Shown: positions 1,564-61,177, counted from the first letter of the stretch. The stretch: 64,000 nt of DNA from IMGVR_UViG_3300006931_000029:62001-126000, one strand, 5' to 3'. Numbers and translations are program-made. The notes: generated by a model from the letters alone, not told the origin.

Positions 1564-1589
1564 TCTGAACCTGAGAACGTATTTACTAC

Positions 1590-1916
1590 ATGCCGCACAG
1601 TATCGTCAAGAAACTTCTTGGGGAAGCAAGTCAAGATGCGCGATTCGACGTCAACGCTCGAATCGAAATCTGGGTCACTATTTCGGACCTCGAGTACGAT
1701 CGGCGGATTCAGGCCCTTCAGCAAGACCCGCGTCCAGTGGAGGCTAAAATCGTTGACGCAAAGAAGATTGCCCTGCAGGTCGCTCACGACAAGGTCAATG
1801 AGAAATCTACGGGAGACTTTGACATCACAGCTGACATCAGCATGGAGTCGATGAATGTCAATCGGATCGATTGGGTCGCGCTGGTCAGTCCTCCTCCGCC
1901 TGAGGACGAGGGTTAA
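1590..1916 (+). CDS. hypothetical protein with IVKKLLGE leader (candidate head protein)
   Basis: 108-aa ORF preceded by TATTTAC 3 nt upstream. Its N-terminus matches other small ORFs in the window. Confidence 0.6.
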   Translation: MPHSIVKKLLGEASQDARFDVNARIEIWVTISDLEYDRRIQALQQDPRPVEAKIVDAKKIALQVAHDKVNEKSTGDFDITADISMESMNVNRIDWVALVSPPPPEDEG

Positions 1917-2950
1917 AGTCCGTCTAGCAATCGCTCCAGCGAGTTAATTGAGCTGAACGGCTTTCGCTGTTCGAACGTCTTTACGGCTGCTTTTGCGTCG
2001 TCGTTTGGATCGATACCTTTTGGCAAAGGAGGAGCGACGGTTACCTTGATGATGTTCGTCAGTTTCTTGCAGCTATCCCACGCCGAAGCGATAGCGTCTG
2101 GGTCGAACATCAAACAAAGCTCCTTGATTCCTCGAGCTGTGAGAATTTTGGCTTGTTGTTCCGGGCTAATTTTATGCTTGAAGATGGCGACCGGTACAAC
2201 CTCGTTCGTTCGCAGTTCGTTCTTCAGCGAATAGACGTTGAACATCGATTCGACTACGATTCCGACTTTCGCTTCCGGAGCCCTCAGTCGGTCGATGTCG
2301 TAGACCCAGTAGCGAGAACCTAGTGGGATTTCGTACTTCGTCGGAAACTGCTTCGTCGATGGTTTCTTGCCGGTTTCCGGGTCGGGTTTCGGGTCTCGAT
2401 ACGTCCGTCCTTGGTAGTAAACCACGCGGTCGTATTCCATCACTGGAAAGATGCAAAACGGTTCCCACCTTCCGTCTTCCATCGTGTATCCCGCGCCGGC
2501 ATCTTCGAACGTTTTGAGGTCGAGATTTTTCCGAATTGCCATCTTCTCGATCAGTCTAGCGTATCCGCTTCCTCGGCGTTCGGTTAGCGGTGTGAATCCC
2601 CGCGGAAGTTTGATGTCGTTCGTGACTGCGAGTACGCTTCGCCTAGTTGCGTAGACGGCGTCCAAATCCTTCATCGCGTCGTCAAGCGTGGTCGTATCGT
2701 AGAGAGCGATGTCGCTTAGGTCCGGATCGTGGCCGAGAGTTTTGATCCACGCCAGGAAATCTCCGCCAACGCCACACCGCCAGCAGTTAGTTTTGCCGGT
2801 TTTAAGGTTCACCGACCTGTTGCCGGACTGGTCACCGCATCTGGGTTGCTCGCAGAGCATCACCAGTTCGTCCTGGGACGAACGGGCTTTGACTACTTGA
2901 AACAGTCCCTCGGCGACTGTTTTGAGCTTGCTACCGACTAGTTTTGCCAC
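1913..2950 (-). CDS. DNA primase (Zn finger + TOPRIM; DnaG/gp61-like)
   Basis: N-terminal C..RC....CWRC zinc finger, plus IVVES and LMFDPDA TOPRIM-like motifs. Confidence 0.8.
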   Translation of the reverse strand: MAKLVGSKLKTVAEGLFQVVKARSSQDELVMLCEQPRCGDQSGNRSVNLKTGKTNCWRCGVGGDFLAWIKTLGHDPDLSDIALYDTTTLDDAMKDLDAVYATRRSVLAVTNDIKLPRGFTPLTERRGSGYARLIEKMAIRKNLDLKTFEDAGAGYTMEDGRWEPFCIFPVMEYDRVVYYQGRTYRDPKPDPETGKKPSTKQFPTKYEIPLGSRYWVYDIDRLRAPEAKVGIVVESMFNVYSLKNELRTNEVVPVAIFKHKISPEQQAKILTARGIKELCLMFDPDAIASAWDSCKKLTNIIKVTVAPPLPKGIDPNDDAKAAVKTFEQRKPFSSINSLERLLDGL

Positions 2951-2961
2951 AATGGCAAGAA

Positions 2962-3732
2962 CTATACGTTGGGAACCCCACGGATGAAAGCAGAATCTCT
3001 CATGGCGATGTTTCCACTGATTTCAGGGGTGGGATTGAACGGGAAAATCTCCTCGGGAATAATGACTGCAGAAATCGTTAGGGGCGTCGTGGTGGATTGG
3101 TCAACCCCATTGAACTGAATCGACGAAATCCAGCACTTCTTCATCACAAACGCCATTGAGACTTCCATGCCAGCCGACGCAGAAGCGTTAAGGGCATCCG
3201 CAACGATTCCAGAGGTGTCTTTCGTTGATCCCTGCAAGAAATAGAGCTTGATGTCTTTTTTGAACGTGTCGCCAAGCGGCACAGGAATCTCAGGCAATTG
3301 GACTGACATGTCCTCTGAATTGTACGGTAGCCGGCCGATCCTGCCGAGGATTCTCCAACCGTAGAGAAGCGAGTAAATCTTGGAGCGCTTAAGCTTCGAC
3401 GTCGTCGAAATGTTGTTCGAGTTCGAAAAACCGGTCGTCGCCGAGTCAACCAGAAAATCAATCCGGACTCCGCCAACAGATTCATCAAAACTAGGGTACA
3501 GTCTTGGCGTGTTCAGGGCCTTGACTTCGACCTCTGCAATCCTCGCTTCTGGAAATGTAACTTGCCGCGCAAACTGCACCGTGTCGCCTGGCTGAGGAAG
3601 CTCCAACTGGTTCGAAAATGGCGCGCGGCGGACAGCCGTCAACACGTTCTCCAAGTCAAGAACCCAAAGATCGCCGCGCTGGGCTTCGAACCCGCCGGCG
3701 TTTCCCCAGTTGTTTCGAGACTTGATGACCAT
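2962..3732 (-). CDS. tail tube-like paralog (baseplate tube initiator, gp48/gp54-like)
   Basis: N-terminus NNWGNAGGFEAQRGDLWVLDL parallels NQWGAAGSGLDQQRSDLFYVLL of the tube gene at 7794..8477, and FPEA/CWISSIQF motifs are tube-like. Confidence 0.55.
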   Translation of the reverse strand: MVIKSRNNWGNAGGFEAQRGDLWVLDLENVLTAVRRAPFSNQLELPQPGDTVQFARQVTFPEARIAEVEVKALNTPRLYPSFDESVGGVRIDFLVDSATTGFSNSNNISTTSKLKRSKIYSLLYGWRILGRIGRLPYNSEDMSVQLPEIPVPLGDTFKKDIKLYFLQGSTKDTSGIVADALNASASAGMEVSMAFVMKKCWISSIQFNGVDQSTTTPLTISAVIIPEEIFPFNPTPEISGNIAMRDSAFIRGVPNV

Positions 3733-3735
3733 GAT

Positions 3736-3743
3736 GTATCTAC
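3736..3743. promoter_or_regulatory. bidirectional TANWTAV element between divergent structural genes 15 bp apart
   Basis: TATCTAC lies 4 nt before GTG 3748 (+), and TAGATAC lies 3 nt before the ATG at 3732 (-). Confidence 0.55.
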
Positions 3744-3747
3744 TTTG

Positions 3748-4560: not shown

Positions 4561-4573
4561 GATACTTAGGCAG

Positions 4574-5101: not shown

Positions 5102-5117
5102 GCCGTAGTTATCCAAC

Positions 5118-10599: not shown

Positions 10600-10624
10600 G
10601 TGAGTGGTGGTCTTGCTATTCTAA

Positions 10625-11530
10625 CTATGCGCTAGTCGCAGGAGGAAGCCCCTCGCGCGATTCTATCGCTGGGTTTTGCTGGCCTACCCTGACGTCGTCC
10701 AGTCCAGCATACGTGGCATTGAAGTCAAAATAACGATCTAGTTCGTCCGGTGGGATAGTTGCTTTCTCTTTCGCTAGTCCGATTTCCCACAGGACTGGAC
10801 TAAATACCGTTCGGTAATCCACAGAAAATCCTTCGACGCACAGGTTGAATGATACGCGCATCTCCTGGTTGTTCTCATTGTCACCTTCCTGAGTGATGGA
10901 TTGAATTCCACCTTCGAGGTACATGCGCAAATACTGAGGCCCGTGAGGAAAGGGATACCGAGCAACGATAAACGTTTGTGGTACTCCACCTGAAATCCAG
11001 AGGCGGCGTTGAAGTCGGTTTACAAACACCGACTGGGTCTGTGGAGTCTTGCAGAAATACTCCAGTTGGAACCTGAAGTCCCAGCCAGCCGGCATCTGCA
11101 TGCTCGCAGCAACGCCTAGATCGTTCAGCCTGACGTTGGCCGCTTCTTTGTCGGCCGTCGGGAAATACGCCCGACGGTTTCGGTGGTAACTCGAGCTTTG
11201 GGAGGCTCGATACTGCCAGTCCAGGCGTTTTACCGAAATGAGCGGGTAGAAGACGTTCGATGGCTGGGGATTGTAAACAGGTTGCCCCCTAGCGTCCTTA
11301 ACGTCAAGCAAATACTTGAAGGGGTTGTTTCCTGCCTTGAACAACCGCGCGAACTCCGCGTGAGCATCCCTTGGGGTCGCGAACACGACCGGAGTTGGAT
11401 AACCACCATCCTGGAGCGGGAACGACTTGTAAAGCCAACGTTGAAGCGCCAGCTCGTGAATCCGGACAGAAGTAAACTCGAGTTGGTCTACTTTGTCGTC
11501 CGCGTAATCTTTGGATGCGTCAACGGCCAT
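10625..11530 (-). CDS. tail terminator / sheath stabilizer (gp15-like)
   Basis: PTPVVFATP, YPLISVKRLDW and MPAGWDFRFQL motifs; position upstream of the sheath gene. Confidence 0.65.
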   Translation of the reverse strand: MAVDASKDYADDKVDQLEFTSVRIHELALQRWLYKSFPLQDGGYPTPVVFATPRDAHAEFARLFKAGNNPFKYLLDVKDARGQPVYNPQPSNVFYPLISVKRLDWQYRASQSSSYHRNRRAYFPTADKEAANVRLNDLGVAASMQMPAGWDFRFQLEYFCKTPQTQSVFVNRLQRRLWISGGVPQTFIVARYPFPHGPQYLRMYLEGGIQSITQEGDNENNQEMRVSFNLCVEGFSVDYRTVFSPVLWEIGLAKEKATIPPDELDRYFDFNATYAGLDDVRVGQQNPAIESREGLPPATSA

Positions 11531-11557
11531 CGGCCTAATTACGCACCCAAGTCAGAT

Positions 11558-12736: not shown

Positions 12737-12745
12737 CGACTAAGT

Positions 12746-13213
12746 ATGTCTCTTCCTGAATTATGCCACAAATGCCGTCAGCTAAGACCAAAGGACCTAG
12801 GACGTTTCTTCACGGTTCAAGGTCGCTGTCACGACCGGAAATTTGTGTGCAATCGCTGTCTTGCAAAACCAGCGCCGGAACGATGCGGCAACACGTCACC
12901 GTCTCCAATCGAACTTGAAGCACGAAGAGCCTTGTTGGAAACCGGTTGGAAATTTGTCGAAGAATTTGAGCTCAAGACATTCAGATTTGACTTCGCGATT
13001 CGTGCTTTGCGATTGCTAATCGAAATCGACTCAAAGCGGTGGCACAGTCATCCTTCGCGCCGCGCTCGGGATAAGAGGAAAACAGAAGCAGCGAAAGCAG
13101 AAGGGTGGGACGTAACCCGAGTGACGACAAAGAGTGCGGATTCTGTTTCATTTATGGTGAAGCAGGTTGTCATGCAGAGGGAGGCGGAATTAGCAACGAG
13201 TCCGGATTATTGA
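12746..13213 (+). CDS. DUF559/Vsr-like PD-(D/E)xK endonuclease with N-terminal Cys cluster
   Basis: SPIELEARRAL, FRFDFAI, LIEIDSKRWH and RDKRKT..GWDVTRV motifs. Confidence 0.8.
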   Translation: MSLPELCHKCRQLRPKDLGRFFTVQGRCHDRKFVCNRCLAKPAPERCGNTSPSPIELEARRALLETGWKFVEEFELKTFRFDFAIRALRLLIEIDSKRWHSHPSRRARDKRKTEAAKAEGWDVTRVTTKSADSVSFMVKQVVMQREAELATSPDY

Positions 13214-14459: not shown

Positions 14460-14466
14460 ACCCTAT

Positions 14467-14691
14467 TTACTTGGTGCCAGCGATCTTCTTGACTAGTTTG
14501 GAAGCTTGGCGGACTGGGCCGACCACGTCTCTGCTCGGGAAGCCTTTTTTGCGTCCACCGTTGGTTAGCGTGCTAACCATTTGCGAATACAGGTCAAATT
14601 TATTGCTGCCTTTCAGGATGTTGAGCCCCTTCATCCTGGCATATTTCTTGGCGCTTGCCGGTAACGGCAGTTTTCCGATGTCGTCTCTCAT
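14467..14691 (-). CDS. small basic hypothetical protein
   Basis: 74-aa ORF overlapping the upstream gene by ATGA. Confidence 0.45.
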   Translation of the reverse strand: MRDDIGKLPLPASAKKYARMKGLNILKGSNKFDLYSQMVSTLTNGGRKKGFPSRDVVGPVRQASKLVKKIAGTK

Positions 14692-17105: not shown

Positions 17106-17145
17106 GAGCTATCTATCTTCCTGAGCGAGGCGCGTTCTGCATCGT

Positions 17146-22511: not shown

Positions 22512-22563
22512 CTTCGTAACTACCAGCGCCAGACGGCGTCTGGCCAAGGCCAAGAAAAAAGTG

Positions 22564-27345: not shown

Positions 27346-27366
27346 GGATGACTAAATACACAGAGC

Positions 27367-28272: not shown

Positions 28273-29742
28273 TTAGCTGTTCGTTGGGCCGAAGTTCGTC
28301 GGTCCGTTGAGCACCTTGCCGCGCACGTACATCTTCGAGTTGACAACCTTCTTGGCGAAGGAAGTCGCGAAGCCACGCTGGTGCAGGAAGTCCGGGAGGA
28401 CGATGTCCGGCGTGGTGTAGAGCTTCTGGTACTCGGCCAGCACGTAGCCGGTGACGAGGAACTGGTCGCCCTTGTGGCCGATCAGGAACTCGTTGTTCGG
28501 GTAGTGCGGGTCAGCGAAGACCTTCTTGCCGGCCAAGTCACCGATGTAGGTGATGCCCTGCATCTGCGTCGAGTTGCCCTTGCGGACGAACTGTGGCAGC
28601 GTCTCGATGACGGTCGCGAGTTGCAGACCGGCGAGAATCCAGTTACCGGCCGCCATGTTGGTGGCGCCGAAGATCAGGTTCGAACCGGTTGAGATCGCGT
28701 CGATGACCGAGAACTTGTGGGTCTGGTAGCTGACGCCGGTTGGCGCTTGAGCATCCCAGGTGACCACGCCAGCGTCCGCACGAGCGCGGAGATCGAAGAT
28801 CACCTGACGGTGCTTCTGGTACTGGAGGGCGTTCGTGAGCGCGTTCAGCAGGATCGGCTCGGCCTTGATGTTGTACATCGCCTGCAAGTTCTGGTCGGCT
28901 TCCTCGGACCAGACCGCCTTGAGCTTCAGCACCTTCGCCGTCACCGGGGTGGACGAGAGTTTCATCTCGTAACCCATGATGTTGGAGTTACCTTCGGAGT
29001 CGAAGGTGTAGGTGGCCGTCAGCGTTTGTCCGTTTTGGTTGGACGCCGTCGTGACCGTGATCGCGCCGGTCTGGTAGTTGATCGTGCCGCCAGTGATGTT
29101 GGTACCAGCAACGATGTTGCCGTTACCGTCATCCGACGTGGACTCTTGACCGGACGTCACCGTCACGGTGCCAGCGCGAACTGGGCTCCAAGCGAGCGTG
29201 CCAGAAACCGTGCCGCTGCCGATGGTGCCGACTGACTCACCTTCAACGAGCTCGTCAGAGTCCATGAAGCGGTCGGAGGCGCCCTGGAGGGAACGCCACA
29301 TCGGGGAACCGGCAGGAACCGCACCCTTGGCGCGGTCGGTCACGATGTCGACATAAACGATCTGCGAGACCGGACCAGCCATCGGCTGGAGGGCGACAAG
29401 CTGATCGATGACGTCGTTCTCGGACATGTTCGCGAGGACCGGGAAAATCCACTTGTCGAACGTTCCCAGGGCTTGCGTGCGGGTCGACTCGGACATCTGA
29501 CCGAACTTCGACCGGCAGTTTTCCAACATAATCGCGGCGTAGGCGCGCTTATGTTCCGGCATGTGTTCCACGAACTCTTTCCAGCCTTTGGCTTTCCAGA
29601 GTTCGGAATAGGACGCGCCTTCGGCGATTCCTGTTGGGGTTGAAGCGAGGTGGTAGCCCCACTCGAGAACTTCGGAAAACCGTGTGAGACTGCCGCCGTT
29701 TGTCGCCAGCATCGGCCTTCCATCTTGGGTTTTGATGACCAT
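28273..29742 (-). CDS. major capsid protein (T4 gp23-like) with a Gly/Thr-rich beta insertion
   Basis: AIMLEN, VALQPMAGPVSQIVY, VTAKVLKLKAVWSEEADQNL and GYVLAEY motifs; strong codon bias; terminator downstream. Confidence 0.9.
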   Translation of the reverse strand: MVIKTQDGRPMLATNGGSLTRFSEVLEWGYHLASTPTGIAEGASYSELWKAKGWKEFVEHMPEHKRAYAAIMLENCRSKFGQMSESTRTQALGTFDKWIFPVLANMSENDVIDQLVALQPMAGPVSQIVYVDIVTDRAKGAVPAGSPMWRSLQGASDRFMDSDELVEGESVGTIGSGTVSGTLAWSPVRAGTVTVTSGQESTSDDGNGNIVAGTNITGGTINYQTGAITVTTASNQNGQTLTATYTFDSEGNSNIMGYEMKLSSTPVTAKVLKLKAVWSEEADQNLQAMYNIKAEPILLNALTNALQYQKHRQVIFDLRARADAGVVTWDAQAPTGVSYQTHKFSVIDAISTGSNLIFGATNMAAGNWILAGLQLATVIETLPQFVRKGNSTQMQGITYIGDLAGKKVFADPHYPNNEFLIGHKGDQFLVTGYVLAEYQKLYTTPDIVLPDFLHQRGFATSFAKKVVNSKMYVRGKVLNGPTNFGPTNS

Positions 29743-29783
29743 GGTAGGAGGTATTTGACTATTTGTGGTGGTTGATGCTCAGC

Positions 29784-31427: not shown

Positions 31428-31502
31428 CCTCTAAGCATGAAAACATATACTCTCCCACGCTCAGGTCAGACTCTACGCTTCACTGGTTATTGAACGGCAA
31501 AG

Positions 31503-37792: not shown

Positions 37793-37863
37793 TTAGCGTA
37801 GGTTAGATACTTGAGGCAAAGTGGGTTGGGCAGGGAAAAGAATACTCTTCAAGGTTCTCTGGT

Positions 37864-38666: not shown

Positions 38667-40010
38667 TTACTCGTCGTCGAGATCGATGTCGGCATCGTCA
38701 TCTTTCACGTCTTCGTCTCCTACGACGTTGTCGCTGAACATGATTTCTCGGGCCTTCAGCCAAAGCAAGTCGAGATCAGCTTGATGGTCTTTGTAGAAGT
38801 TAACCCATTCTTTCTTCGAAGGAAGTTCAGGATCGTTCGTTGCTTTGCCCCGATCGTCGTCTTCTTCCAAGCTGCGCCCAGCCGATTTCTTAGACGATGC
38901 TGGTTGAAACGTGCTGGTGGTGATGCCGAATTTGGCGAACTGCATCGTGAACCGCTTGGTCGACGGCGAGTATTTGGCGATGCCCAAGAAAATCATTGTC
39001 TCGAGCCGAGAGTAGAGATTGTTGAACCCACCCTCGAACAGGATAACGAGCCGACCCTCGCGAAGCGGCTTGATTTGCCGATTCTTCTGCGTGCGAAAGC
39101 CAATGAGATACCCTTGGGAGAACCTGGCGCCGCTCAGGCGATAGTTCTCGTTGAGCCTGAACATAAACACCCGCAGAGACGAATAGAACCGCAGAGCTTT
39201 GCCACCGAAGGTAGAATAGTCGTCGTTTTGCGGAGTGCTGTAGTGAACCTTCCGCTGGCCGGGAGCCGTCTGCTTGAACGCGTCACGGACCTGGTTAGTG
39301 CAAACCATCAGCACGTTGTGCCGGTTGATTTCACGCTGCATACGACGGAACCCTTCAGACAGCATCTTCGGTTGGCGCTGGAAGTCTTCCTTGTTCCACT
39401 CCTTGGTCATCTCCTGCTTTGAAGACGTGCCGGCGATAGTGTCGACCACCAGAACCACGAAGTACAGAATGGGCTCGCGTTTCTCGTCCTTTGCGGCCTT
39501 GTTTTCCTCCAACTGTTTTTCCTTGATCTTCTCGATGACAATGTCCGACATCTTGAAAATCTGGTCGACGGTATCGCAACGAGCAATGATGCAATCAAGC
39601 GTCACTCCTTCGATGATGATCTTTTCATCTTCGTCTACCGATTGCTCGTTGTCAATGAAGACTGTGGTCACGGCAATCTTGGCCGGATCAATTTTCGTCA
39701 GCGACATCACGCCGCCGACCACTGACCGTCGGTAGATTTCTCCGATTTGTGCCTTGATCAGAGAGCGGATGCAGAGAGCGCTTTTGCCGCACGCCTCAAG
39801 CCCGTAAAGCTCAACGATTCGTCCGAAAGGAAGACCGCCGCACGCCTCATCCATCGGATCAAGCCCAGTTTTGAGGACGTACTCAACCTTGGACAGGATG
39901 TCCTCAGTCGAAAGGGCAACGTCAAACGTACCCTCTTCGTTTGAATCCTTCGGGCGTTGGCGCTTTAGTTGGCGCGCGACGATCTGATTAAGGTTGGGAA
40001 TTTCGCTCAT
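38667..40010 (-). CDS. recA: RecA/UvsX recombinase
   Basis: TGLDPMD..GGLPFGRIVELYGLEACGKS, VVDTIAG, TNQVR and GGKALRFYSSLR motifs. Confidence 0.92.
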   Translation of the reverse strand: MSEIPNLNQIVARQLKRQRPKDSNEEGTFDVALSTEDILSKVEYVLKTGLDPMDEACGGLPFGRIVELYGLEACGKSALCIRSLIKAQIGEIYRRSVVGGVMSLTKIDPAKIAVTTVFIDNEQSVDEDEKIIIEGVTLDCIIARCDTVDQIFKMSDIVIEKIKEKQLEENKAAKDEKREPILYFVVLVVDTIAGTSSKQEMTKEWNKEDFQRQPKMLSEGFRRMQREINRHNVLMVCTNQVRDAFKQTAPGQRKVHYSTPQNDDYSTFGGKALRFYSSLRVFMFRLNENYRLSGARFSQGYLIGFRTQKNRQIKPLREGRLVILFEGGFNNLYSRLETMIFLGIAKYSPSTKRFTMQFAKFGITTSTFQPASSKKSAGRSLEEDDDRGKATNDPELPSKKEWVNFYKDHQADLDLLWLKAREIMFSDNVVGDEDVKDDDADIDLDDE

Positions 40011-41676: not shown

Positions 41677-42132
41677 TTAATCTGGAGTGATTGCGGGTTC
41701 GTCAGTGTAAACTTTTCTCCGTGTGGATTCAGTAGAACGGACTAGATCAAGTTTGCTTTGAAGCGAGATTTGCAGATTGATCAGCCTGCCACACCATCCT
41801 GAAAGCACGGCAAAACGACGGTGCGCTTTCTTCACGTCTTCTTGCAGAACGATCTGGCGGGAGAGATTCGTGTCAGTCTTTTTTCCGGTAAAATCTGGAT
41901 CGCCTTCTAGTCGATTGAACGCTTCAGCTTCGACCTCTTTGATTTCTTGCTTCGCGACCAGTTTTTTCTCGGTGTAAATTTGAACGAGCATGTTAACCCA
42001 CTCAATGAGTGCTGGCAACTCCTCGCTTGCGACAGAGATGTCGTTGTAGTCCTTCTTCAAGTAAAGGTCTACGTTGAGTTCGTAGCCTTGAAGCTTGATC
42101 GGTTCGAGTGTTGGTAGCTCGTCGTTTGGCAC
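41677..42132 (-). CDS. UvsY-like recombination mediator
   Basis: Helical 151-aa protein with UvsY-like pattern, adjacent to the SSB and helicase genes. Confidence 0.6.
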   Translation of the reverse strand: MPNDELPTLEPIKLQGYELNVDLYLKKDYNDISVASEELPALIEWVNMLVQIYTEKKLVAKQEIKEVEAEAFNRLEGDPDFTGKKTDTNLSRQIVLQEDVKKAHRRFAVLSGWCGRLINLQISLQSKLDLVRSTESTRRKVYTDEPAITPD

Positions 42133-43649: not shown

Positions 43650-44621
43650 TCAAAGAACGCCAGCCGCGTGCAGACAGCTCACGTGCTGAACAGCCAACCC
43701 TATTCTGCTCCAAAAACGTACGGCATCGGTCACAATCTCAGGCGCTTCAAAATCATCTGGCCTGAAACCGTGTCTGTCCAGCACCTCGGTCAACGCCTGG
43801 TGAAACATCTTCGACCTTAGTTCGAAGTACGCCGTAGCAACGTCTTTGCGCTTGCGCAACCATCCGTTTGTCCGGTGAATTTCAGCTCGGTGTTTTATGA
43901 TGGCAGGCGATATTGGAGGATGCGAATCGTGCCACTCGTAGTAGGATGGTTCGAGACACAACCACGTAGAGTCAAGCTTGAGTTCATTTTCGGCGTAGAA
44001 TTTTTCAGTGGGCGACCCACTAAATCTCAGCTTGTGACCGACTATCCACATTCCGGCAAGGACTTCGCTGTTCAAAATTCTAGCTTTGGCTCTTGTCACT
44101 TCGTCTCCACCAGTCAGGGTAGCAAGACTCTCGCTGTCGAAGGTGCCGTATTTGTCTCGAGCAAGGCTTCTGAAATCGTTTACAAGCGTCGCAGCGCCTT
44201 TCGCGAAAAGATAACTGGCGTAGAACCTAGTTCCTGGCGCTAGCTGCTTTCTGGCCAGCATCACGCACATCATGAAAAGCTTGATCGAACAACGAGCCTG
44301 TTCTGCTGCTAAGATCAACTTGTGTTCCGCATCCTGAAATCTACGCAAAGAATCTGGTTGTTCATCTCCAAAGACCAGACGATAACACAGCTTGTAAAGC
44401 GAATCGACGTCATCGGACTCGTGGACAGAAAACTTCGACAGGTCTGCCGGAACAAAGTCGAACTCGATCTTGCTCAGTCGGACCTTTCCTCTCCTCACGA
44501 CGGAGACTCCTCTGCATTCTTTCGAGTGCGGACATTTTTGGCAAACTTGGTCAGCGCTGTCGTATTCTACCCCGTAACACTTGAGCGGGACATCGACCGC
44601 GATTCGAGAAACATTCGGCAT
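43650..44621 (-). CDS. hypothetical protein with an N-terminal 4-Cys Zn motif
   Basis: CYGVEY-x6-C-x2-C-x5-C. Start MPNVS preferred; it overlaps the polymerase ATG at CATG. Confidence 0.6.
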   Translation of the reverse strand: MPNVSRIAVDVPLKCYGVEYDSADQVCQKCPHSKECRGVSVVRRGKVRLSKIEFDFVPADLSKFSVHESDDVDSLYKLCYRLVFGDEQPDSLRRFQDAEHKLILAAEQARCSIKLFMMCVMLARKQLAPGTRFYASYLFAKGAATLVNDFRSLARDKYGTFDSESLATLTGGDEVTRAKARILNSEVLAGMWIVGHKLRFSGSPTEKFYAENELKLDSTWLCLEPSYYEWHDSHPPISPAIIKHRAEIHRTNGWLRKRKDVATAYFELRSKMFHQALTEVLDRHGFRPDDFEAPEIVTDAVRFWSRIGLAVQHVSCLHAAGVL

Positions 44622-47600
44622 GGCTATTAAGAAACTCAAAGAGAAGAAAAAGACGGTTCCTAAATTTGAACGTGACCTGGCAGAACAGACTGCCAACCAC
44701 GGGTTCAAACCCGGGCCTAATCATCCGCTGTGCTTGAAGTGTGGACTGCACCACAACGGTGCGAGAAATCCGTACCTACCGCCCTCTGGAGAAACTAAGC
44801 GGCCGCTCATCACAGTAATCGTGGATAGCGTTTCGCGTGGTGAAGACGAAGCCAACTATTTTGGTGCAACCGGAACCACCGGCCTGATGAAGAAGCTCAT
44901 CAGAGACATGGCACCGGACTTGAAGCTCGACATCGAACGAATTAGGTTTGTGCCATTGACCAGATGTTCAGCTAGAGAAGGCAAGGTCAATTTCAAAACC
45001 AAAGGTAACTGGTGCCGCTGGTTTACAGTCGACGACCTACGCAATAATCCGCCAGAGATGGTGATGGCAATTGGGACTACGGCTCTCGGAGCGCTGTGTC
45101 ATAAGTCTAGCGCGCAAGATTGGTCTGGTCGTCTGCTAACATGGAGGGGTTGGCCAGACGACTGGCTGATGAATCCGAAATATCTCGACGGCCACCACCA
45201 CTTTGGAGCTAGGCCAAAGACCGACGAACGCATCCCGCTGTTTGCCCTTCAAGCGCCGAAGCTGATTTACGGCACGCAGAATCCTCGAGTCATCAAGAAA
45301 TGGCGAGACCAAGTTCGTGCCGGATTAGAGATGGCGGTCAGAGGAGTGAAACCGCTCATCTACGATCGGCCATGGTGGAAACTTTCCACGAATCCAGACG
45401 AGATTGAGCAAATACTCAATTCCATCAGAGACGGCACGTTCGTCCAGTACGACACGGAAACGACAGGTCTCGAGCCATTCCGCAACGGGTCAAAGATCGT
45501 TTTCCACATGTTCCGGTGGATCGACGAAAATGGAAATCCACAATCGATTGGTTTTCCGTGGGACTATCCAGAGAGCCCACTGCTGCCGTTCATTAAGCGG
45601 CTAACGCCAGTCGTCCTCCGCACTCTGGCGCGCATCAAGATCGAGGGGCATAACATCACCTTCGACATTCTTTTCAACGTAGGGACAATGGAAGGAGCTG
45701 ACCTGAATGTCCTCTCGAGAGCAATGCACGGCGACACGCTGCACATGCTTTACACCATCCGGCAAGATACCGGATCAAGAGGATTGGACATAGTCGCGTA
45801 TGATTGGGCTCCGACTCTTGCCGGCTACGAAGAAGAGATGGTTCTTCTCATCGGTCAGTACCCCGAGCTTCTTGATCCGGGAGCAGGAGCAGGCGGTCAC
45901 TACGCTCGGTGTCCAACCGACAAATGGGATTCGCACCTGAAGCCGTACGTCATGGGCGACGTTGAAGTGGTTGCTGAGGCTGCTCCTTCCATGCGGAAGC
46001 GGTTGGAGACGGCGAGAATATACCAGATTCCTCTGGCGCACCCGACCATCAGCGGCAAATTCAGGTGGTACGAAACACCGAAACGTGACTGGGTGTACGA
46101 CAAGATCATGCTGCCAGCACAGCGCACGCTGACTGCGATGATGGCTAGAGGCATGCATGTCGACGTGGCAGAGGTTGCCATGCAGGAAGATTTGATGCCG
46201 AAGGCCATCTCGGCAGCGAAAAACAAGTTACGAGCATCGCATCCGAAGATTGTGGCATGGGCAGAGCAGATGGAATCAACCGATCCTGAGTGGAAGTTCG
46301 ACCTCGAGTCAAAAGATCAGCTCAAGAAAGTGCTCTACGATTTGATGGGTTTGCCGATCAAGCGGCTAACTAAAGCAGGGCGCCAGCAACTAGGCGATCT
46401 AGACGAGCGAGAAATGAAAGCTCTAGATCGCCCCACGCTGATGCAGTTTGCATCCGCAGACAAGTTTACGCTCAGCTCGTTGTCTGCGGCACACCCTGAA
46501 GTTCGTCCACTGGTCGATTACCGCAAACAACACAAGGCTTACACGACCTATGTCAGGTCCATGCGAAACCACTTTGACGCTCTTGTTGACAAAAAGAAGC
46601 GAGAAAAGCCTCCCTATTTGATGGACGACATGTGCGTCCACGCCCAGTTCAACCAAACCGGCACGCGCTCTGGACGCCTTAGTTCCAGCAATCCAAACCT
46701 TCAGCAGCTTCCTCGTGAATCTCTGGTGAAGCGGATGTACGACTCTCGATTCGGAGCGGACGGCGTCATCTACCAAGGCGACTTGTCTCAGATTGAATTG
46801 CGACTTATCGCCTGCGCCTGCGGCGACCCAACGATGGTTAAGGCGTACTGGGACAAGGTCGACCTTCACTCGCTCACTGCCAGCAAGATTTACAGGACCG
46901 AGTACGAGAAGTTCGAGAAGACCTACATGTCGTGGTTGCAGAAAAACGGCAAGGAAAAAGAGGCCAAGGACCTCGACAGTAAGCGTAAAGTTGCCAAGAC
47001 TGTTAACTTCCTCACCGGCTACGGCGGCGGTCCACTAGGTCTTCAAACTTCACTTGCTCAAAACGGAGTCTACGTTTCTCTTGAGGAGTGCGAGGACATC
47101 ATCGAGAATTTTTTCAACGTTTATCCGTCGCTCAGGCGTCACATCGGTCTCTACAAGGATTTCATCCTCAAGCACGGCGTAGCAGTGTCAATCTTTGGAC
47201 GAGTTCGAATCTTCGAGGAAGTTTTCTCTGACGACAACGAGTCGAAGTCAAAAGCTCTTCGGTCTGGTTACAACCATTTGATTCAATCGACCGCCTCTGA
47301 CATGATGCTCGTGTGCATCACGGTCATCGAACATTTGATGCGAGACATGAACCTGGAATCCATGCTTGTTTCCACCGTGCACGATTCGATGGTTATCGAC
47401 GCAAAACGAAACGAACTTCAGCAGGTTCACGAGATTTGCGATCAAGTCATCAACAACATTCCTGAGATTCTTTCGCTCTTCTTTGGCGAACCCTATGACA
47501 GGTCGTGGATCATCACACCGATCGAAGGCGATTTCGAAGTCGGCAAGAATTACCTCGATCAGAAGAAGGTCGTCGCAAACAAAGACGGTAGCGTTGATTG

Positions 47601-47675: not shown

Positions 47676-47682
47676 GGTGTGA

Positions 47683-50444: not shown

Positions 50445-50470
50445 GTTCTTAATTACACAACCTTTTCCAC

Positions 50471-51019: not shown

Positions 51020-51300
51020 TGACTGAAGTCGTCCATTGTCGACGCGAACTTTTCGACGTCTTCATTGGTCGCCCGTCGAAGTGGGGTAATCCGTACGTCG
51101 TGGGCCGTGACGGTTCACGAACCCAAGTCATTCAAAAATATCGAGCCTGGGTTGTGAACCAACCGCAACTGATGGCTGCGTTACCCGAACTGCGTGACAA
51201 GATTCTCGGCTGTTACTGCAGGCCATTGGCCTGCCACGGCGACGTGTTGGTTGATCTTATCGCCACCGAGGTGGTGAATCAGGACAAGACTCAGTCGTAA
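51019..51300 (+). CDS. DUF4326-family protein
   Basis: DVFIGRPSKWGNPY..LGCYCRPLACHGDVL motif. Confidence 0.88.
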   Translation: MTEVVHCRRELFDVFIGRPSKWGNPYVVGRDGSRTQVIQKYRAWVVNQPQLMAALPELRDKILGCYCRPLACHGDVLVDLIATEVVNQDKTQS

Positions 51301-52091: not shown

Positions 52092-52611
52092 CTCCCTTTA
52101 CGTACGTTCGAATGCTGCCGAGACAGAAAGTACTCTTGTTCGCCTCCAGCAGAATCCGAAGGTCCTGCCTGGTTATCGTCCCTCTATCAACCAAGGTGTC
52201 GATTGCATCCTTGTCTAATCCTGAAGATACACACGAAAATTCGGCGCTGTGACCGCAGCTAAATAGCCAAAGAGCAACGGCGTGACGAGAACGGTTGATG
52301 CCGCCGGAACAGTGGACAAACGTCGGAAGTCTTGCTCCAAAACAATAGTCAAGGGCTCGCTTGATTCCAAACAACGACGTGGTCGGCCACTTGGCGTATT
52401 CGTCAATTGGAAACCACAGCGCTTTGATCCACGGCGAAGCGTCAAACGTGAAGTACGGGCTGTCGGTGACATTGATGACGGCACGAAAATTCTCCAGCAA
52501 CCATGCTCGTTGCTGGTGGATTTCTAGATTTTCAACTGAACCAATCGTGATACCGAAATCCGGAACCACGACCTTCACCCACGTCGGTTTACTGGAGGTC
52601 GTTAACGCCAT
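52060..52611 (-). CDS. dual-specificity/tyrosine phosphatase-like protein
   Basis: FVHCSGGINRS (HCx5R) motif. Confidence 0.8.
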   Translation of the reverse strand: MALTTSSKPTWVKVVVPDFGITIGSVENLEIHQQRAWLLENFRAVINVTDSPYFTFDASPWIKALWFPIDEYAKWPTTSLFGIKRALDYCFGARLPTFVHCSGGINRSRHAVALWLFSCGHSAEFSCVSSGLDKDAIDTLVDRGTITRQDLRILLEANKSTFCLGSIRTYVKGDATLESQELS

Positions 52612-56197: not shown

Positions 56198-56259
56198 TTT
56201 TCTAATTACAACGTTACTTAGGTCTAAGACCTCCACCCAAACCCATTCTTCAAAAGGTA

Positions 56260-56574: not shown

Positions 56575-56602
56575 CTTCCTGTTTGGAAGTTCGGAATGGG
56601 GA

Positions 56603-59229: not shown

Positions 59230-59277
59230 CGGTTTCGCTTAAGTATCCGTGTTGTTAGGACTGAAACATTCCATCCT

Positions 59278-59421
59278 ATGCTCGCATTCCTCGTAGGTCT
59301 CACCATCGGTGCCGTTGTCGGTGTAATCGCAACAATTCTCGTGTTCCGCAAGAACAAGGGAGTTCAGGCTCAGGCCGAATTGGCCGTTGATGCCGTCAAA
59401 CAGAAGATCGACAAGCACTAA
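59278..59421 (+). CDS. 47-aa single-pass membrane protein
   Basis: MLAFLVGLTIGAVVGVIATILVF followed by RKNK; this is the C-terminal part of track ORF 58903..59421. Confidence 0.6.
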   Translation: MLAFLVGLTIGAVVGVIATILVFRKNKGVQAQAELAVDAVKQKIDKH

Positions 59422-59771
59422 GTCTCGTCGTAGACGGGCATTCCGTTCGTCAGCCTCAGTTGGCGGTATTCCGAGCCAACATCGGCGGTCTGGTACTTCA
59501 CGGTCCAGTTGAAGCCGTTGTGGAAATCCGTCCGCCAAACGTCGCGCGCATCCTCAGGGTGGTGATGCCGAATGTGAAGACTTGGCTGCATGTGAAGCAA
59601 GTTGCCGTCGATCCGATATTCCCACGAGACGTTTGAAATCTTCGGCGTTCCGTTCTGGTGGACGTCAATGACACAAACACTCGGCTCTTTCCCTTCAGCC
59701 TTGTAGAGCAGATAGAGGCGTTGAGGAGTCGTCTGAGTCTGAAGAATGGCTGTGCCGACGACTTCGTCCAT
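59418..59771 (-). CDS. hypothetical protein
   Basis: 117 aa with TACGTAA 3 nt upstream. Confidence 0.55.
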   Translation of the reverse strand: MDEVVGTAILQTQTTPQRLYLLYKAEGKEPSVCVIDVHQNGTPKISNVSWEYRIDGNLLHMQPSLHIRHHHPEDARDVWRTDFHNGFNWTVKYQTADVGSEYRQLRLTNGMPVYDET

Positions 59772-59781
59772 GGTTTACGTA

Positions 59782-60228
59782 TCAGAGCTTCGTGACTCGG
59801 AAGTTTCCTGAAACGGAGACGCGCAACTGGGTTTCTTTCGTATTGTTCACTGCGAGAACCGCGTAGGTGTCAGGCGCTTCGAAGTCCCGCCAATAGTAAG
59901 GGTCCATTTGGTTGTAGGTCGGAACGTCACAAGGAACATAGACGAGAGGTTGTCCAGAGTGGAGGTTCAACTGTTCGAACTCCCCGGAGTAAAGACCGGC
60001 AAACGTGATCGCCATGTTCGTCGTCAACTTCTCGGCAACCTCGTTCTGAGTCACCACGTCGATGTAGTGGACGCTCAGCCACCGAAGACTCAACCGATAG
60101 TTCGGCGGAAGTTTCACTGAGCTGACCAGCACCGACGACATCGGATAAATGATTGACTGGGACATGCAAAACGGAATGTCCAGCCACCGACCGAGAGTGC
60201 CGGTTGGAATGTAAGTTGATGGAAGCAC
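59782..60228 (-). CDS. hypothetical beta-rich structural protein
   Basis: 148 aa with TATTTAA 4 nt upstream of GTG. Confidence 0.55.
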   Translation of the reverse strand: MLPSTYIPTGTLGRWLDIPFCMSQSIIYPMSSVLVSSVKLPPNYRLSLRWLSVHYIDVVTQNEVAEKLTTNMAITFAGLYSGEFEQLNLHSGQPLVYVPCDVPTYNQMDPYYWRDFEAPDTYAVLAVNNTKETQLRVSVSGNFRVTKL

Positions 60229-60255
60229 GGGCTTAAATAAGCCTAAATTTTATTG

Positions 60256-60283
60256 TTTACAAAATCCAGCAGAAGCGTATGGT
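60256..60283 (+). promoter_or_regulatory. sigma70-like promoter
   Basis: TTTACA-N16-TATGGT, 7 nt before ATG 60291; identical geometry to 47648. Confidence 0.65.
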
Positions 60284-60290
60284 GGTTGTC

Positions 60291-60689
60291 ATGGACGAGC
60301 GAGCGCTCACAAACAACCTACTGGGTCGTGGCCACTCCGACTCAACCCCAGTTGCCTTTAGACCCTGGGACACCCTTCACGCACGCGTCACTCAAGGAAT
60401 CGTGGCAGGTGCCGTCGGTGACCTATTGATTCTCAATGCAGTCAATGGCTTGACCGACCAACAAGCCGACATGTTTGCAGCCGCAGAGAAGCGCAGAGAA
60501 CTCGAGGAGTACGAAGAAGGTAAGCGAATCCTCGCCAGAAACCAAGAGCGAGCCCACGGCAAGTGGTTAGCCACCCAGAGGCAACTTAAAGCTCCGCCTC
60601 CATTGGAACGTCAACCTGGGGAAAGCGATGCCGTTTTCGCGCTGAAACAGCTAGCGCGTCACGAATTTCTAAGCAAGTTCAGTAGGTAA
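60291..60689 (+). CDS. hypothetical (probable early) protein
   Basis: The ATG at 60291 fits the promoter geometry. Confidence 0.55.
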   Translation: MDERALTNNLLGRGHSDSTPVAFRPWDTLHARVTQGIVAGAVGDLLILNAVNGLTDQQADMFAAAEKRRELEEYEEGKRILARNQERAHGKWLATQRQLKAPPPLERQPGESDAVFALKQLARHEFLSKFSR

Positions 60690-60692
60690 GAC

Positions 60693-61010
60693 GTGGACCC
60701 GAAAGACCTAGTCGAGCGCATGCTGGAGGACGATGACCGTGACCGGTACGATGACGAACCGAGAGACGGCTCTCTCGTCTATGCCACGATCTATCCAATC
60801 GGCGAAGAAGACGTTGACCTGGTGATTCGTTACCACGCGTCGAAAGCCCACCCTGACGATTCAGGCTACCGCCCAGGAGCTTACCACGTTGAAATCGAGG
60901 AGATTGTTCGAGACGACACAAAGGAAGACATCACGCGCAAGCTGACGCAGGATCAGTTCTACGAGCTGCAAGAAAAAGTCTCAGAACACTTCCACCACTA
61001 CGTCCGATGA
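60693..61010 (+). CDS. acidic hypothetical protein with LVERMLED leader
   Basis: 105 aa with TAGGTAA 3 nt upstream. Confidence 0.55.
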   Translation: MDPKDLVERMLEDDDRDRYDDEPRDGSLVYATIYPIGEEDVDLVIRYHASKAHPDDSGYRPGAYHVEIEEIVRDDTKEDITRKLTQDQFYELQEKVSEHFHHYVR

Positions 61011-61171
61011 GCGATAAATCTAAAACCTACGTCGTCACCAAGAACGGCGTCAAAGTCTCCAGCCCTCTTCCACTCGACGAGGCAAATGCGCAGGCAGACC
61101 AACTTCGGTCTCTGACCGAGAGCAAGGGTGAAACTGCAATCATCTCTGTTGTTCCCACGCTGATGGGATAA
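61007..61171 (+). CDS. 54-aa hypothetical protein (not in track)
   Basis: ATGA-coupled ORF MSDKSKTYVVTKNG...PTLMG* fills the gap. Confidence 0.5.
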   Translation: MSDKSKTYVVTKNGVKVSSPLPLDEANAQADQLRSLTESKGETAIISVVPTLMG

Positions 61172-61177
61172 TTAGTC

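What the first reader, a model, noticed from the sequence alone, without database searches (positions are those of the whole stretch)
1580..61175. TANWTAV motif 2-6 nt upstream of virion gene start codons: candidate late promoter giving leaderless mRNA
Seen on the coding strand (gap to start codon in brackets): TATTTAC 1580 (3), TAGATAC 3736 (3), TATCTAC 3737 (4), TACTTAG 4563 (4), TAGTTAT 5106 (5), TAATTAG 11535 (4), TACTTAG 12740 (3), TAAATAG 14463 (3), TAGATAG 17109 (3), TAGTTAC 22516 (4), TATTTAG 27352 (6), TGCTTAG 31431 (3), TAATTAA 50449 (4), TAATTAG 56202 (4), TACGTAA 59775 (3), TATTTAA 60233 (4), TAGGTAA 60683 (3), TAATTAG 61169 (2). Longer gaps occur at 10621, 37803 and 59239. These genes are mostly structural or candidate structural, the genome is GC-rich, and most instances are not upstream stop codons. 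The near-palindrome serves both strands at 3736-3743. Established: T4 late promoters are -10-only (TATAAATA) and read by gp55. Inference: this is the equivalent element, with the TSS at or near the start codon.
Basis: partly seen in the sequence, partly recalled or inferred. Interest (0 to 1): 0.75.

Follow-up and report, generated by a model that had tools for sequence, protein, structure and literature searches.

The report
Start-codon-adjacent late promoter motif
A short DNA motif (TAnnTA, usually followed by G) sits three to six bases before the start codons of virion genes in this uncultured 225-kb soil phage and its relatives. It is most likely a promoter that makes messenger RNAs with almost no leader, a strategy so far mapped mainly in Thermus phages.

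Summary
All 18 listed sites exist as stated. Across the whole genome, TAnnTA lies 3-7 nt before 38 of 294 long-ORF starts (about 0.8 expected from genome frequency; 2.5 in dinucleotide shuffles). It ranks first of all 256 XYnnZW patterns, and does so again in three diverged relatives of 223-238 kb.

The motif stays in front of orthologous genes while its N positions and the spacer change. Elsewhere in the genomes it is depleted. It has no -35 partner. The genes behind it are mostly tail, baseplate and connector genes.

The phage has no Shine-Dalgarno sequences at all. It carries two further start-adjacent motif classes:
- An early sigma70-like class, TTTACA-N17-TAnnnT-N6/7-ATG, whose geometry puts the transcription start on the start codon.
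- A GTTCT-N7/8 class in front of replication genes.

Best reading: a late-class, -10-only promoter giving leaderless or near-leaderless mRNA. The sheath gene uses the same motif with a 6-27 nt leader.

The T4 gp55 analogy fails as membership. No gp55, gp45 or phage RNA polymerase was found, and the one FliA-like sigma is missing from relatives that have the motif.

No transcription start data could be obtained. The closest known case is the leaderless late promoters of Thermus phages. The host is probably a Shine-Dalgarno-poor Verrucomicrobiota lineage.

The parts
1580..1586 (+). L motif TATTTAC, gap 3 to ATG 1590 (108 aa, function unknown)
3736..3742 (-). L motif TAGATAC, gap 3 to ATG 3732 (256 aa, weak tail-tube hit). 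Overlaps the next site on the other strand.
   Evidence: Same divergent pair with motifs in L002.
3737..3743 (+). L motif TATCTAC, gap 4 to GTG 3748 (270 aa, baseplate hub/gp5-like)
   Evidence: L002 orthologue has TATCTAC-aac-ATG.
4563..4569 (+). L motif TACTTAG, gap 4 to ATG 4574 (175 aa)
5106..5112 (+). L motif TAGTTAT, gap 5 to ATG 5118 (117 aa)
   Evidence: Orthologues in L001 and L002 keep the motif.
10621..10627 (-). L motif TAGTTAG, 21 nt before the tail sheath ATG 10599. Leadered use, with a G-poor, CA-rich leader.
   Evidence: The motif is kept 6-27 nt before the sheath start in 9 relatives.
11535..11541 (-). L motif TAATTAG, gap 4 to ATG 11530 (301 aa)
12740..12746 (-). L motif TACTTAG, gap 3 to ATG 12736 (197 aa)
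14463..14469 (-). L motif TAAATAG, gap 3 to GTG 14459 (429 aa)
17109..17115 (-). L motif TAGATAG, gap 3 to ATG 17105 (184 aa). Divergent from the SbcC-like gene, which has GTTCT-N7-GTG.
22516..22522 (-). L motif TAGTTAC, gap 4 to ATG 22511 (850 aa, function unknown)
27352..27358 (-). L motif TATTTAG, gap 6 to ATG 27345 (85 aa)
31431..31437 (-). TGCTTAG before GTG 31427 (prohead protease/scaffold). Lacks the TA..TA core, so membership is doubtful. Relatives have true motifs 1-35 nt upstream of this gene.
37803..37809 (-). L motif TATCTAA, 10 nt before ATG 37792 (338 aa)
50449..50455 (-). L motif TAATTAA, gap 4 to ATG 50444 (187 aa)
52098..52104 (-). L motif TACGTAA, gap 6 to ATG 52091 (124 aa).
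56202..56208 (-). L motif TAATTAG, gap 4 to ATG 56197 (620 aa tail fibre)
59239..59245 (-). L motif TACTTAA, 9 nt before ATG 59229 (730 aa, function unknown)
59775..59781 (-). L motif TACGTAA, gap 3 to ATG 59771 (117 aa)
60233..60239 (-). L motif TATTTAA, gap 4 to GTG 60228 (148 aa)
60683..60689 (+). L motif TAGGTAA, gap 3 to GTG 60693 (105 aa)
61169..61175 (+). L motif TAATTAG, gap 2 to ATG 61178 (116 aa)

Best explanation
The motif, R-TA-N-T-TA-G (family consensus GTAGTTAG), is the core and probably the only specific element of a late-class promoter. The host's multisubunit RNA polymerase uses it after being redirected by a phage factor that is still unidentified.

The motif has no -35 partner. 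It lies so close to the start codon (mode TAnnTA-G-NNN-ATG) that transcription must begin at the A or G of the start codon or within about four bases upstream. The resulting mRNAs are leaderless or nearly so.

These mRNAs would be translated without Shine-Dalgarno pairing. The whole phage lacks Shine-Dalgarno sequences, and so does its probable Verrucomicrobiota host lineage. A minority of late genes (sheath, baseplate wedge, protease operon) use the same motif 6-35 nt upstream and carry short, G-poor leaders.

Shown: the motif, its positional coupling to start codons, its conservation, its depletion elsewhere, and its association with virion genes. Inferred: that it acts on DNA as a promoter, that it is 'late', where transcription starts, and which protein reads it.
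For: 1. Sharp positional enrichment. TAnnTA is the top of 256 patterns in G000 and in three relatives with 39-51% sheath identity (38/0.8, 35/0.6, 40/0.7, 31/1.0 observed/expected). Shuffles give at most 10. The gap-3 peak also appears in 63 loci around the capsid gene of relatives.

2. Conservation in front of orthologues. Nine of 11 motif-bearing genes keep the motif in the nearest relatives, while genes without it stay without it. With genomes at about 40% amino-acid identity, class agreement gives p = 1e-4 and 2e-4, and p = 0.1 for G001. The TA..TA core is kept while positions 3, 4 and 7 and the spacer change.

3. The sheath gene keeps the motif in 10 genomes at 6-27 nt from its ATG. Motifs 7-30 nt upstream of starts are 4.6-6.6 times enriched. 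A signal that tolerates variable distance to the start codon fits a promoter, not a ribosome-binding element.

4. TA-N2-TA away from starts is only 40-55% as frequent as other TA-Nk-TA spacings in all four genomes. That is the pattern expected from selection against stray sites.

5. No conserved position lies upstream of the motif.

6. The genome has no Shine-Dalgarno signal. Its roughly 35 sigma70-like early promoters (TTGTTTACA, 16-17 nt spacer, TAnnnT-like hexamer) sit with the -35 end 29 nt before the start codon. By standard sigma70 geometry that puts +1 on the start codon. A third motif, GTTCT-N7/8-RTG, precedes primase, exonuclease, SbcC, DnaB and thymidylate kinase.

7. Motif class tracks gene function. 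By my own tally of the PHROG hits, the split virion/non-virion is 10/3 for L genes against 1/8 for GTTCT genes (Fisher p = 0.008). A later Pfam hit makes the GTTCT split 2/8.

8. Start codons after the motif are ATG or GTG in 38 of 38 cases in G000. The -1 base is a pyrimidine in 71-90% of cases. This is the Y(-1)R(+1) pattern that RNA polymerase prefers at start sites.

9. The motif serves divergent gene pairs whose start codons are only 15-21 bp apart. It also follows strong terminator hairpins within 5-12 nt.

10. Precedent: in Thermus phages phiYS40 and Lalka27a, class-specific -10 elements lie 6 nt before start codons and most transcripts are leaderless. In Deinococcus, -10 elements adjacent to ORFs do the same.
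Against: - No transcription start site data exist.
- The commonest spacing leaves only 4 nt between TAnnTA and the A of ATG. That is 1-3 nt shorter than the 6-7 nt seen at this phage's own sigma70-like promoters and shorter than the usual sigma70 discriminator (established knowledge).
- No sigma factor, gp55-like protein or phage RNA polymerase common to the family was found.
- The sampled Opitutaceae genome shows no start-adjacent -10-like motif, so leaderless expression is not obviously a habit of the host.
- About 30% of sites double as the stop codon of the upstream gene.
- Gene starts come from my own ORF rule, not from curated annotation.
- 'Late' timing is inferred from gene function only.
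Confidence: 0.62

Rival explanations
1. The motif acts in RNA. UAnnUAG-NNN-AUG would be a translation-initiation context, or a recognition site for a phage or host endoribonuclease that trims polycistronic late transcripts just before start codons. It would replace the missing Shine-Dalgarno signal for a subset of genes.
For: The dominant spacing is very rigid: gap 3 in 33 of 40 sites in G002. The phage and the putative host lineage lack Shine-Dalgarno sequences, so other start-selection cues must exist. The -1 C or pyrimidine is shared with genes that lack the motif. The 4-nt distance is awkward for a -10 element.
Against: The same motif is conserved 6-27 nt before the sheath start and is enriched at 7-30 nt generally. 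It occurs in 15-21 bp divergent intergenic regions where no other promoter space exists. Three distinct motifs with the same geometry track three functional gene classes, and one of them is an unmistakable -35/-10 promoter. Most genes inside operons lack the motif and rely on stop-start proximity instead.
Confidence: 0.15
2. The motif is the binding site of a late-gene DNA-binding regulator, either an activator or a repressor/operator (for example the conserved HU-like protein). It would overlap weak, unrecognised promoters rather than being the -10 element itself.
For: The four fixed bases TA..TA read the same on both strands. One site serves two divergent genes. No sigma factor could be assigned. 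An HU-like protein is a core gene of the family.
Against: The family consensus GTAGTTAG is asymmetric. The information content, about 9-10 bits over 7-8 bp, is typical of a -10 element and low for an operator. The tight register with the start codon has no explanation if the real promoter lies elsewhere.
Confidence: 0.1
3. It is a genuine T4-type late promoter: a variant of TATAAATA read by a gp55-like sigma with gp33 and a sliding clamp.
For: It is -10-only. The phage has T4-type capsid, sheath and baseplate-hub genes and UvsX- and UvsY-like genes.
Against: The gp55 profiles phrog_234 and phrog_12791 and the gp45 profile phrog_223 give no hit even at E <= 10. The consensus is TAGTTA(G), not TATAAATA. 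The replication genes are PolA and DnaB. T4 late mRNAs carry Shine-Dalgarno leaders (established knowledge), unlike here.
Confidence: 0.06
4. It is an artefact: stop codons of upstream genes (TAA/TAG), TA-rich intergenic DNA and the 'first start after a stop' ORF rule together create an apparent motif.
For: About 30% of sites contain the upstream stop codon. With gap 3, the TAG is in frame with the start.
Against: 21% of divergent starts carry the motif. Other stop-containing patterns reach only about 4-fold enrichment against about 48-fold for TAnnTA. Shuffles give at most 10 against 31-40 observed. Versions ending in C or T occur. The motif is conserved across orthologues.
Confidence: 0.02

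Closest known systems
Middle/late promoters of Thermus phages phiYS40, P23-45 and Lalka27a
   Same: A class-specific -10-like element without a functional -35, placed just before the start codon. Most transcripts begin with the A or G of the initiator codon. The early class looks like host sigmaA promoters. Host RNA polymerase is presumed to be re-targeted by phage factors.
   Different: The motif is TAnnTA(G)/GTAGTTAG rather than TANNNT/TAGGGT. The spacing to the start is 4-5 nt after the hexamer instead of about 6. The phage is a 225-kb T4-capsid-type myovirus from soil with a probable Verrucomicrobiota host. There is a complete absence of Shine-Dalgarno sites. No start sites have been mapped here.
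'-10 region adjacent to ORFs' in Deinococcus-Thermus and leaderless genes of Actinobacteria
   Same: A -10 element a few bp upstream of ORFs is sufficient as a promoter and gives leaderless mRNA (PMC12340547). This phage's early class matches that geometry (TAnnnT, 6-7 nt, start codon).
   Different: Those are host sigmaA promoters with TANNNT, and they coexist with GGAG ribosome-binding sites. Here the late element has another sequence and spacing. The sampled putative host lineage shows no such start-adjacent motif.
T4 late promoter TATAAATA with gp55/gp33/gp45
   Same: A -10-only late promoter in a phage with T4-type virion genes. The 3' six bases of the T4 element (TAAATA) fit TAnnTA.
   Different: No gp55 or gp45 homologue was found. 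The consensus differs. T4 late mRNAs have leaders with Shine-Dalgarno sites (established knowledge).
Bacteroidota sigmaA -7 element TAnnTTTG
   Same: It shares TAnnT and belongs to Shine-Dalgarno-poor organisms (from memory; Shine-Dalgarno scarcity in PMC10783764). One relative's capsid contig was binned with a Flavobacteriales MAG.
   Different: Positions 6-8 differ (A-G versus T-T-G). There is no -33 TTTG partner. The early promoters here are TTTACA-N17-TAnnnT, not the Bacteroidota type.

Membership tests
T4-type late transcription (gp55/gp33/gp45) | Promoter consensus TATAAATA centred near -10 | tested here: not met
   The consensus is R-TA-N-T-TA-G in G000 and GTAGTTAG in G002 and G003. 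TAAATA is a rare variant.
T4-type late transcription (gp55/gp33/gp45) | Phage-encoded gp55-family sigma | tested here: not met
   phrog_234 and phrog_12791 give no match in the complete genome at E <= 10. HMM sensitivity limits this test.
T4-type late transcription (gp55/gp33/gp45) | gp45 sliding clamp as mobile enhancer | tested here: not met
   phrog_223 gives no match at E <= 10. gp33 was not tested.
T4-type late transcription (gp55/gp33/gp45) | No -35 element | tested here: met
   No position from -45 to -2 relative to the motif exceeds 0.11 bit.
Leaderless late promoters of the Thermus-phage type | Class-specific -10-like element directly upstream of start codons of one temporal or functional class | tested here: met
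   Virion genes are behind L sites and replication genes behind GTTCT sites.
Leaderless late promoters of the Thermus-phage type | Primary 5' ends coincide with the A or G of the start codon | not testable with these tools
   Only sparse metatranscriptome contigs were available. The geometry is compatible but 1-2 nt tighter than in Thermus phages.
Leaderless late promoters of the Thermus-phage type | Read by host sigmaA holoenzyme modified by phage proteins | not testable with these tools
   No phage RNA polymerase was found. The only sigma is not family-wide. The factor is unidentified.
Standard sigma70 -10 element (TATAAT/TAnnnT, +1 about 7 nt downstream) | T at hexamer position 6 and a 5-8 nt discriminator | tested here: not met
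   Position 6 is an invariant A. The modal distance from the hexamer to the start codon is 4 nt. The phage's early class does meet this feature.
Sigma28 (FliA/WhiG) promoters | TAAA-N15-GCCGATAA, read by a FliA-family sigma | tested here: not met
   No TAAA partner and no GCCGA prefix are present. The FliA-like sigma exists in G000 only and is absent from G001-G005, of which G001-G003 (the ones analysed) carry the motif.

The most novel reading that the evidence does not exclude
A widespread, uncultured clade of 200-240 kb soil and freshwater myoviruses, probably infecting Verrucomicrobiota, expresses essentially its whole proteome without Shine-Dalgarno sites. It would use three temporal classes of start-codon-abutting promoters. 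Its late class (GTAGTTAG-N3-ATG) would be read by a new kind of specificity factor, neither sigma70-like nor gp55-like. That factor would place +1 only 5 nt after the element, a promoter geometry not described for bacterial RNA polymerase.
Probability: 0.3. Interest if true: 0.75.

Novelty: new variant of a known kind. Interest (0 to 1): 0.55.

Why it matters
If the motif is a leaderless late promoter, this phage clade extends the strategy beyond Thermus phages. It would now cover large T4-capsid-type phages of a Shine-Dalgarno-poor, poorly studied host phylum.

It gives a simple rule for finding gene starts and temporal classes in these metagenomic genomes: RTG 3-6 nt after TAnnTA, 7-8 nt after GTTCT, or 29 nt after TTTACA.

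It also points to an unidentified factor that re-targets RNA polymerase to a 7-bp element with unusually tight spacing.

Finally, it shows that standard gene callers, which rely on ribosome-binding-site models, will mis-place starts in such genomes.

Tried and rejected
- RNA evidence. Two run searches were made. Only two metatranscriptomes hold any of the capsid region. Laying them gave six short contigs inside genes and no 5'-end information. No RNA run was listed for the tail region.
- Annotated relatives. A megablast search of the phage collection found nothing. The nearest named phages share about 31% capsid identity.
- Phage RNA polymerase or extra sigma. PF00940 and PF00562 were negative, although the PF00940 control rang nowhere. 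PHROG and Pfam scans of 20 large proteins and 20 core unknown proteins found none. Three Atlas look-ups gave only a UvsY-like protein and a DUF7307 lead.
- FliA-like sigma as the reader of the motif. Rejected, because it is missing from five relatives.
- Sigma28-type or Bacteroidota-type promoter. Rejected on sequence.
- Terminator-then-motif as a statistical test. Only 3.8% against 2.4%, so it is illustrative, not significant.
- Conservation of the GTTCT class across deeply diverged genomes. Not significant under strict definitions, although it is visible before SbcC orthologues.
- The metagenome scan with the sheath alignment returned only the contig itself and a near copy.
- The original phiYS40 and P23-45 papers are not held in the library.


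Full report
WHAT THE WINDOW IS. The window is bases 62,001-126,000 of a single 224,954-bp contig. The contig has 53.5% GC, direct terminal repeats and a completeness estimate of 100%. It was assembled from a rhizosphere metagenome. It encodes a T4-type major capsid protein, a prohead protease, a tail sheath, a baseplate hub and wedge, tail fibres and a portal. It also encodes a PolA-type DNA polymerase, DnaB, primase, an NAD-dependent ligase, an SbcC-like protein and UvsX- and UvsY-like proteins. No close named relative exists: the best capsid identity in the phage collection is about 31%. IMG/VR does hold at least 60 contigs with 64-82% capsid identity, some of them 200-238 kb long. This is therefore one member of a widespread uncultured clade of large myoviruses.

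THE OBSERVATION. The three 'longer gap' sites are also real. I had no gene caller, so I built one: a codon-usage score with greedy non-overlapping choice, taking as start the first ATG, GTG or TTG after the upstream stop. That rule does not use the motif.
- TAnnTAn occurs only 252 times on both strands. Thirty-nine occurrences lie 2-6 nt before a called start, 22 of them at a gap of exactly 3. Ten permuted control patterns of the same composition give 1-12, apart from one that overlaps the motif.
- In an unbiased scan of all 256 XYnnZW patterns 3-7 nt before starts, TAnnTA ranks first, with 38 observed against 0.8 expected.
- Three hundred dinucleotide-preserving shuffles of the same upstream regions give a mean of 2.5 and a maximum of 8.
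The data give R-TA-N-(T>G)-TA-(G>A), then often g-c-c, then the start codon.
- TGCTTAG at 31431 lacks the core and is doubtful. One site, at 52098-52104, was missed.
- About 30% of sites contain the stop codon of the upstream gene. However, 21% of divergently transcribed starts also carry the motif, so stop codons do not explain it.

REPLICATION IN RELATIVES. I fetched three whole relatives: G001 (230 kb), G002 (223 kb) and G003 (238 kb). Their sheath identity to the window is 39-51%.
- In each, TAnnTA is again the top pattern of 256 (35/0.6, 40/0.7 and 31/1.0 observed/expected), with the same peak at gap 3.
- In G002 the motif is sharper, gGTAGTTAgggc-ATG, with gap 3 in 33 of 40 cases. This shows that the ancestral element is asymmetric. 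G000 uses a version relaxed at position 3.
- The 63 capsid-centred loci show the same gap-3 peak, while controls are flat.
- At the level of orthologues, 9 of 11 motif-bearing window genes keep a motif in the nearest relatives (mainly L002, with 69% sheath identity). Genes without the motif stay without it.
- With genomes at about 40% amino-acid identity, class agreement is still significant for G002 and G003 (p = 1e-4 and 2e-4) but not for G001 (p = 0.1).
- Between orthologues the four core bases persist, while positions 3, 4 and 7 and the spacer change.
- Away from gene starts, TA-N2-TA is only 40-55% as frequent as TA-Nk-TA with other spacings, in all four genomes. Between 33% and 49% of all TAnnTA sites lie in the roughly 3.5% of the genome just upstream of starts.

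CONTEXT THAT DECIDES THE READING.
1. The phage has no Shine-Dalgarno signal. G is depleted at -12 to -6, no GGAG-type word is enriched, and the only upstream features are C at -1 (47%) and A at +4.
2. Genes inside operons mostly overlap the upstream gene or follow its stop codon within a few bases.
3. The major capsid gene has no motif. In about 45 relatives it carries a conserved G-free, CA-rich leader after the upstream gene.
4. There is a clear sigma70-type promoter class: a T-run, TTGTTTACA, a 16-17 nt spacer, a TAnnnT-like hexamer (TAGGAT, TTGAAT, TATGGT), then 6-7 nt, then ATG or GTG. There are about 35 sites, mostly before small genes in the 160-220 kb region. The distance from the -35 hexamer to the first ORF-opening start peaks at 29 nt in both G000 and G001. 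By standard sigma70 geometry that puts +1 on the first base of the start codon.
5. A third motif, GTTCT, peaks 7-8 nt before starts in G000, G001 and G002. It precedes primase, an exonuclease, SbcC, DnaB, thymidylate kinase and probably the ligase.
6. The TAnnTA genes with a recognisable function are sheath, tube-like, baseplate hub and wedge, head-tail adaptor, three fibre proteins and an Ig/Hoc-like protein. A few exceptions are an RNA-ligase-like and a methyltransferase-like protein. In my tally the function split between the two classes is significant (p = 0.008). A later Pfam hit to a T4 baseplate family for one GTTCT gene weakens it slightly.

So three different short motifs share the same register to the start codon and track three functional classes, and one of them is an unmistakable -35/-10 promoter. 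This is the main argument that the finding is a promoter class and that its mRNAs are leaderless.

FURTHER POINTS FOR A DNA-LEVEL PROMOTER.
- The sheath gene keeps a motif (TAGTTAG, TAGTTAA, TAGATAG, TAGATAA, TAGTTAC or TAGATAC) in ten genomes, at distances of 6 to 27 nt from its ATG.
- Motifs at 7-30 nt from starts are 4.6-6.6 times enriched in all four genomes. A translation signal would not tolerate that range.
- The motif is the only conserved element in 15-21 bp intergenic regions between divergent genes. At window 3733-3747 one near-palindromic site serves both strands, and this arrangement is conserved in L002.
- In several genomes it follows a strong terminator hairpin within 5-12 nt (these are examples, not a significant enrichment).
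- Start codons after the motif are ATG or GTG in 38 of 38 cases in G000, against about 10% TTG among all calls. The -1 base is a pyrimidine in 71-90% of cases. That matches the known preference of RNA polymerase for pyrimidine at -1 and purine at +1, although the same bias is seen at other genes.

WHAT DOES NOT FIT, OR IS UNKNOWN.
- The modal geometry leaves four bases between TAnnTA and the A of ATG. This is 1-3 nt tighter than at the phage's own sigma70-like promoters and than the usual discriminator length. The motif also has A, not T, at hexamer position 6. It is therefore not a standard sigma70 -10 element.
- I found no family-wide reader. There is no T7-like or multisubunit polymerase gene. 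There is no gp55 or gp45. Nothing sigma-like appears among 20 core unknown proteins.
- G000 has one FliA/WhiG-family sigma (TIGR02479, 212 bits). It is missing from G001-G005, of which G001-G003 carry the motif. Its closest relatives (55-58% identity) are chromosomal FliA genes in flagellar clusters of Opitutaceae. It looks like a recently acquired host gene, not the late factor.
- No transcription start data could be obtained.

HOST HINT. The Opitutaceae loci, and a 260-kb sample of one Opitutaceae MAG, show no Shine-Dalgarno peak and have C at -1 in 61% of long ORFs, the same start context as the phage. Some Verrucomicrobia are listed as 'SD-scarce' in PMC10783764. That sample shows no start-adjacent TAnnnT or TAnnTA, so the abutting-promoter architecture appears to be the phage's own. 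One relative's capsid contig was binned with a Flavobacteriales MAG, a conflicting and weak hint.

COMPARISON WITH WHAT IS KNOWN. The closest described systems are the Thermus phages. phiYS40 makes most of its middle and late mRNAs without leaders (PMC3594737). Lalka27a has late promoters with a distinct TAGGGT -10 element, starts 6 bp downstream, and transcripts that begin with the A or G of the start codon (bioRxiv 10.64898/2026.04.20.719267). P23-45 middle and late promoters are of the extended -10 class (PMC7403470). In Deinococcus a -10 element adjacent to ORFs suffices as a promoter for leaderless genes (PMC12340547). The present case works like these, but it differs in motif, spacing, phage type, likely host phylum and the total absence of Shine-Dalgarno sites. 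The T4 analogy holds only in the sense of '-10-only late promoter'; the tested defining features of membership are not met.

VERDICT. It is a new variant of a known kind, robust across a whole uncultured clade, and directly testable by 5'-end mapping.

Noticed in passing
window 476-830 (-) and 127-209 (-): The phage encodes a full-length tmRNA (Rfam RF00023, 95 bits; ARAGORN tag peptide GNTIVKAFARSNELRLAA) and a tRNA. A TTTTTTGTTTACA early-type promoter lies about 80 nt upstream, at 907-912 (-).
   Followed up: partly
window GTTTAC at 912(-), 22563(+), 28173(-), 38652(-), 47647(+), 60255(+), 62164(-); about 35 sites genome-wide: Early-type sigma70-like promoters: T-run, TTGTTTACA, 16-17 nt spacer, TAnnnT-like hexamer, 6-7 nt, then ATG or GTG. 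The geometry predicts leaderless early mRNAs. The same peak at 29 nt is seen in relative G001.
   Followed up: partly
window GTTCT before starts at 1563(-), 2950(-), 6367(-), 17146(+), 26674(-), 43643(-), 54300(-): A third start-adjacent motif, GTTCT-N7..12-RTG (peak at 7-8), often preceded by GACTA. It precedes primase, exonuclease, SbcC, DnaB and thymidylate kinase, and is a candidate middle promoter class. The peak is also present in G001 and G002.
   Followed up: partly
window 29743-29800 (-), upstream of the major capsid gene: The capsid gene has no motif. In about 45 relatives it carries a conserved G-free leader rich in CAA/ACA repeats after the upstream gene's stop codon. It looks like an unstructured, Shine-Dalgarno-independent translation leader for the most abundant protein.
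   Followed up: partly
whole genome; G006 loci L150-L164: There is no Shine-Dalgarno signal anywhere in the phage, and C at -1 in 47% of starts. An Opitutaceae MAG shows the same pattern (no Shine-Dalgarno peak, C at -1 in 61%). Relatives G002 and G003 prefer T at -1.
   Followed up: partly
G000 199,834-200,742 (-), outside the window (L085:1030-1938): A FliA/WhiG-family sigma factor with an N-terminal extension of about 70 aa. Its nearest homologues are chromosomal FliA genes of Opitutaceae (55-58% identity). It is absent from five related phage genomes. It is probably a host-derived auxiliary gene and a host clue.
   Followed up: yes
window 928-1563 (-); 38667-40010 (-); 41677-42132 (-); G000 44,551-44,883 (-): A GroES/Cpn10-domain protein (like T4 gp31), a UvsX-like recombinase, a UvsY-like protein and an HU-like DNA-binding protein that is a core gene of the family. 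The replication genes are PolA and DnaB, not T4-like.
   Followed up: no
G000 51,150-51,200 (+); G001 about 60,660-60,715; G003 about 212,830-212,885: Strong terminator hairpins with T-runs are followed within 5-12 nt by the motif and a start codon. This leaves no room for any other promoter element.
   Followed up: partly
window 28554-30784: Short contigs identical to the capsid and protease genes occur in two soil/rhizosphere metatranscriptome runs (X20, X23). The phage may therefore be transcribed in situ, but DNA carry-over is not excluded.
   Followed up: no
L098 (CALACF010000165.1): A 3.8-kb contig with a 71%-identical capsid gene is binned in an 'uncultured Flavobacteriales' MAG. This conflicts with the Verrucomicrobiota host hint and may be a binning artefact.
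   Followed up: no
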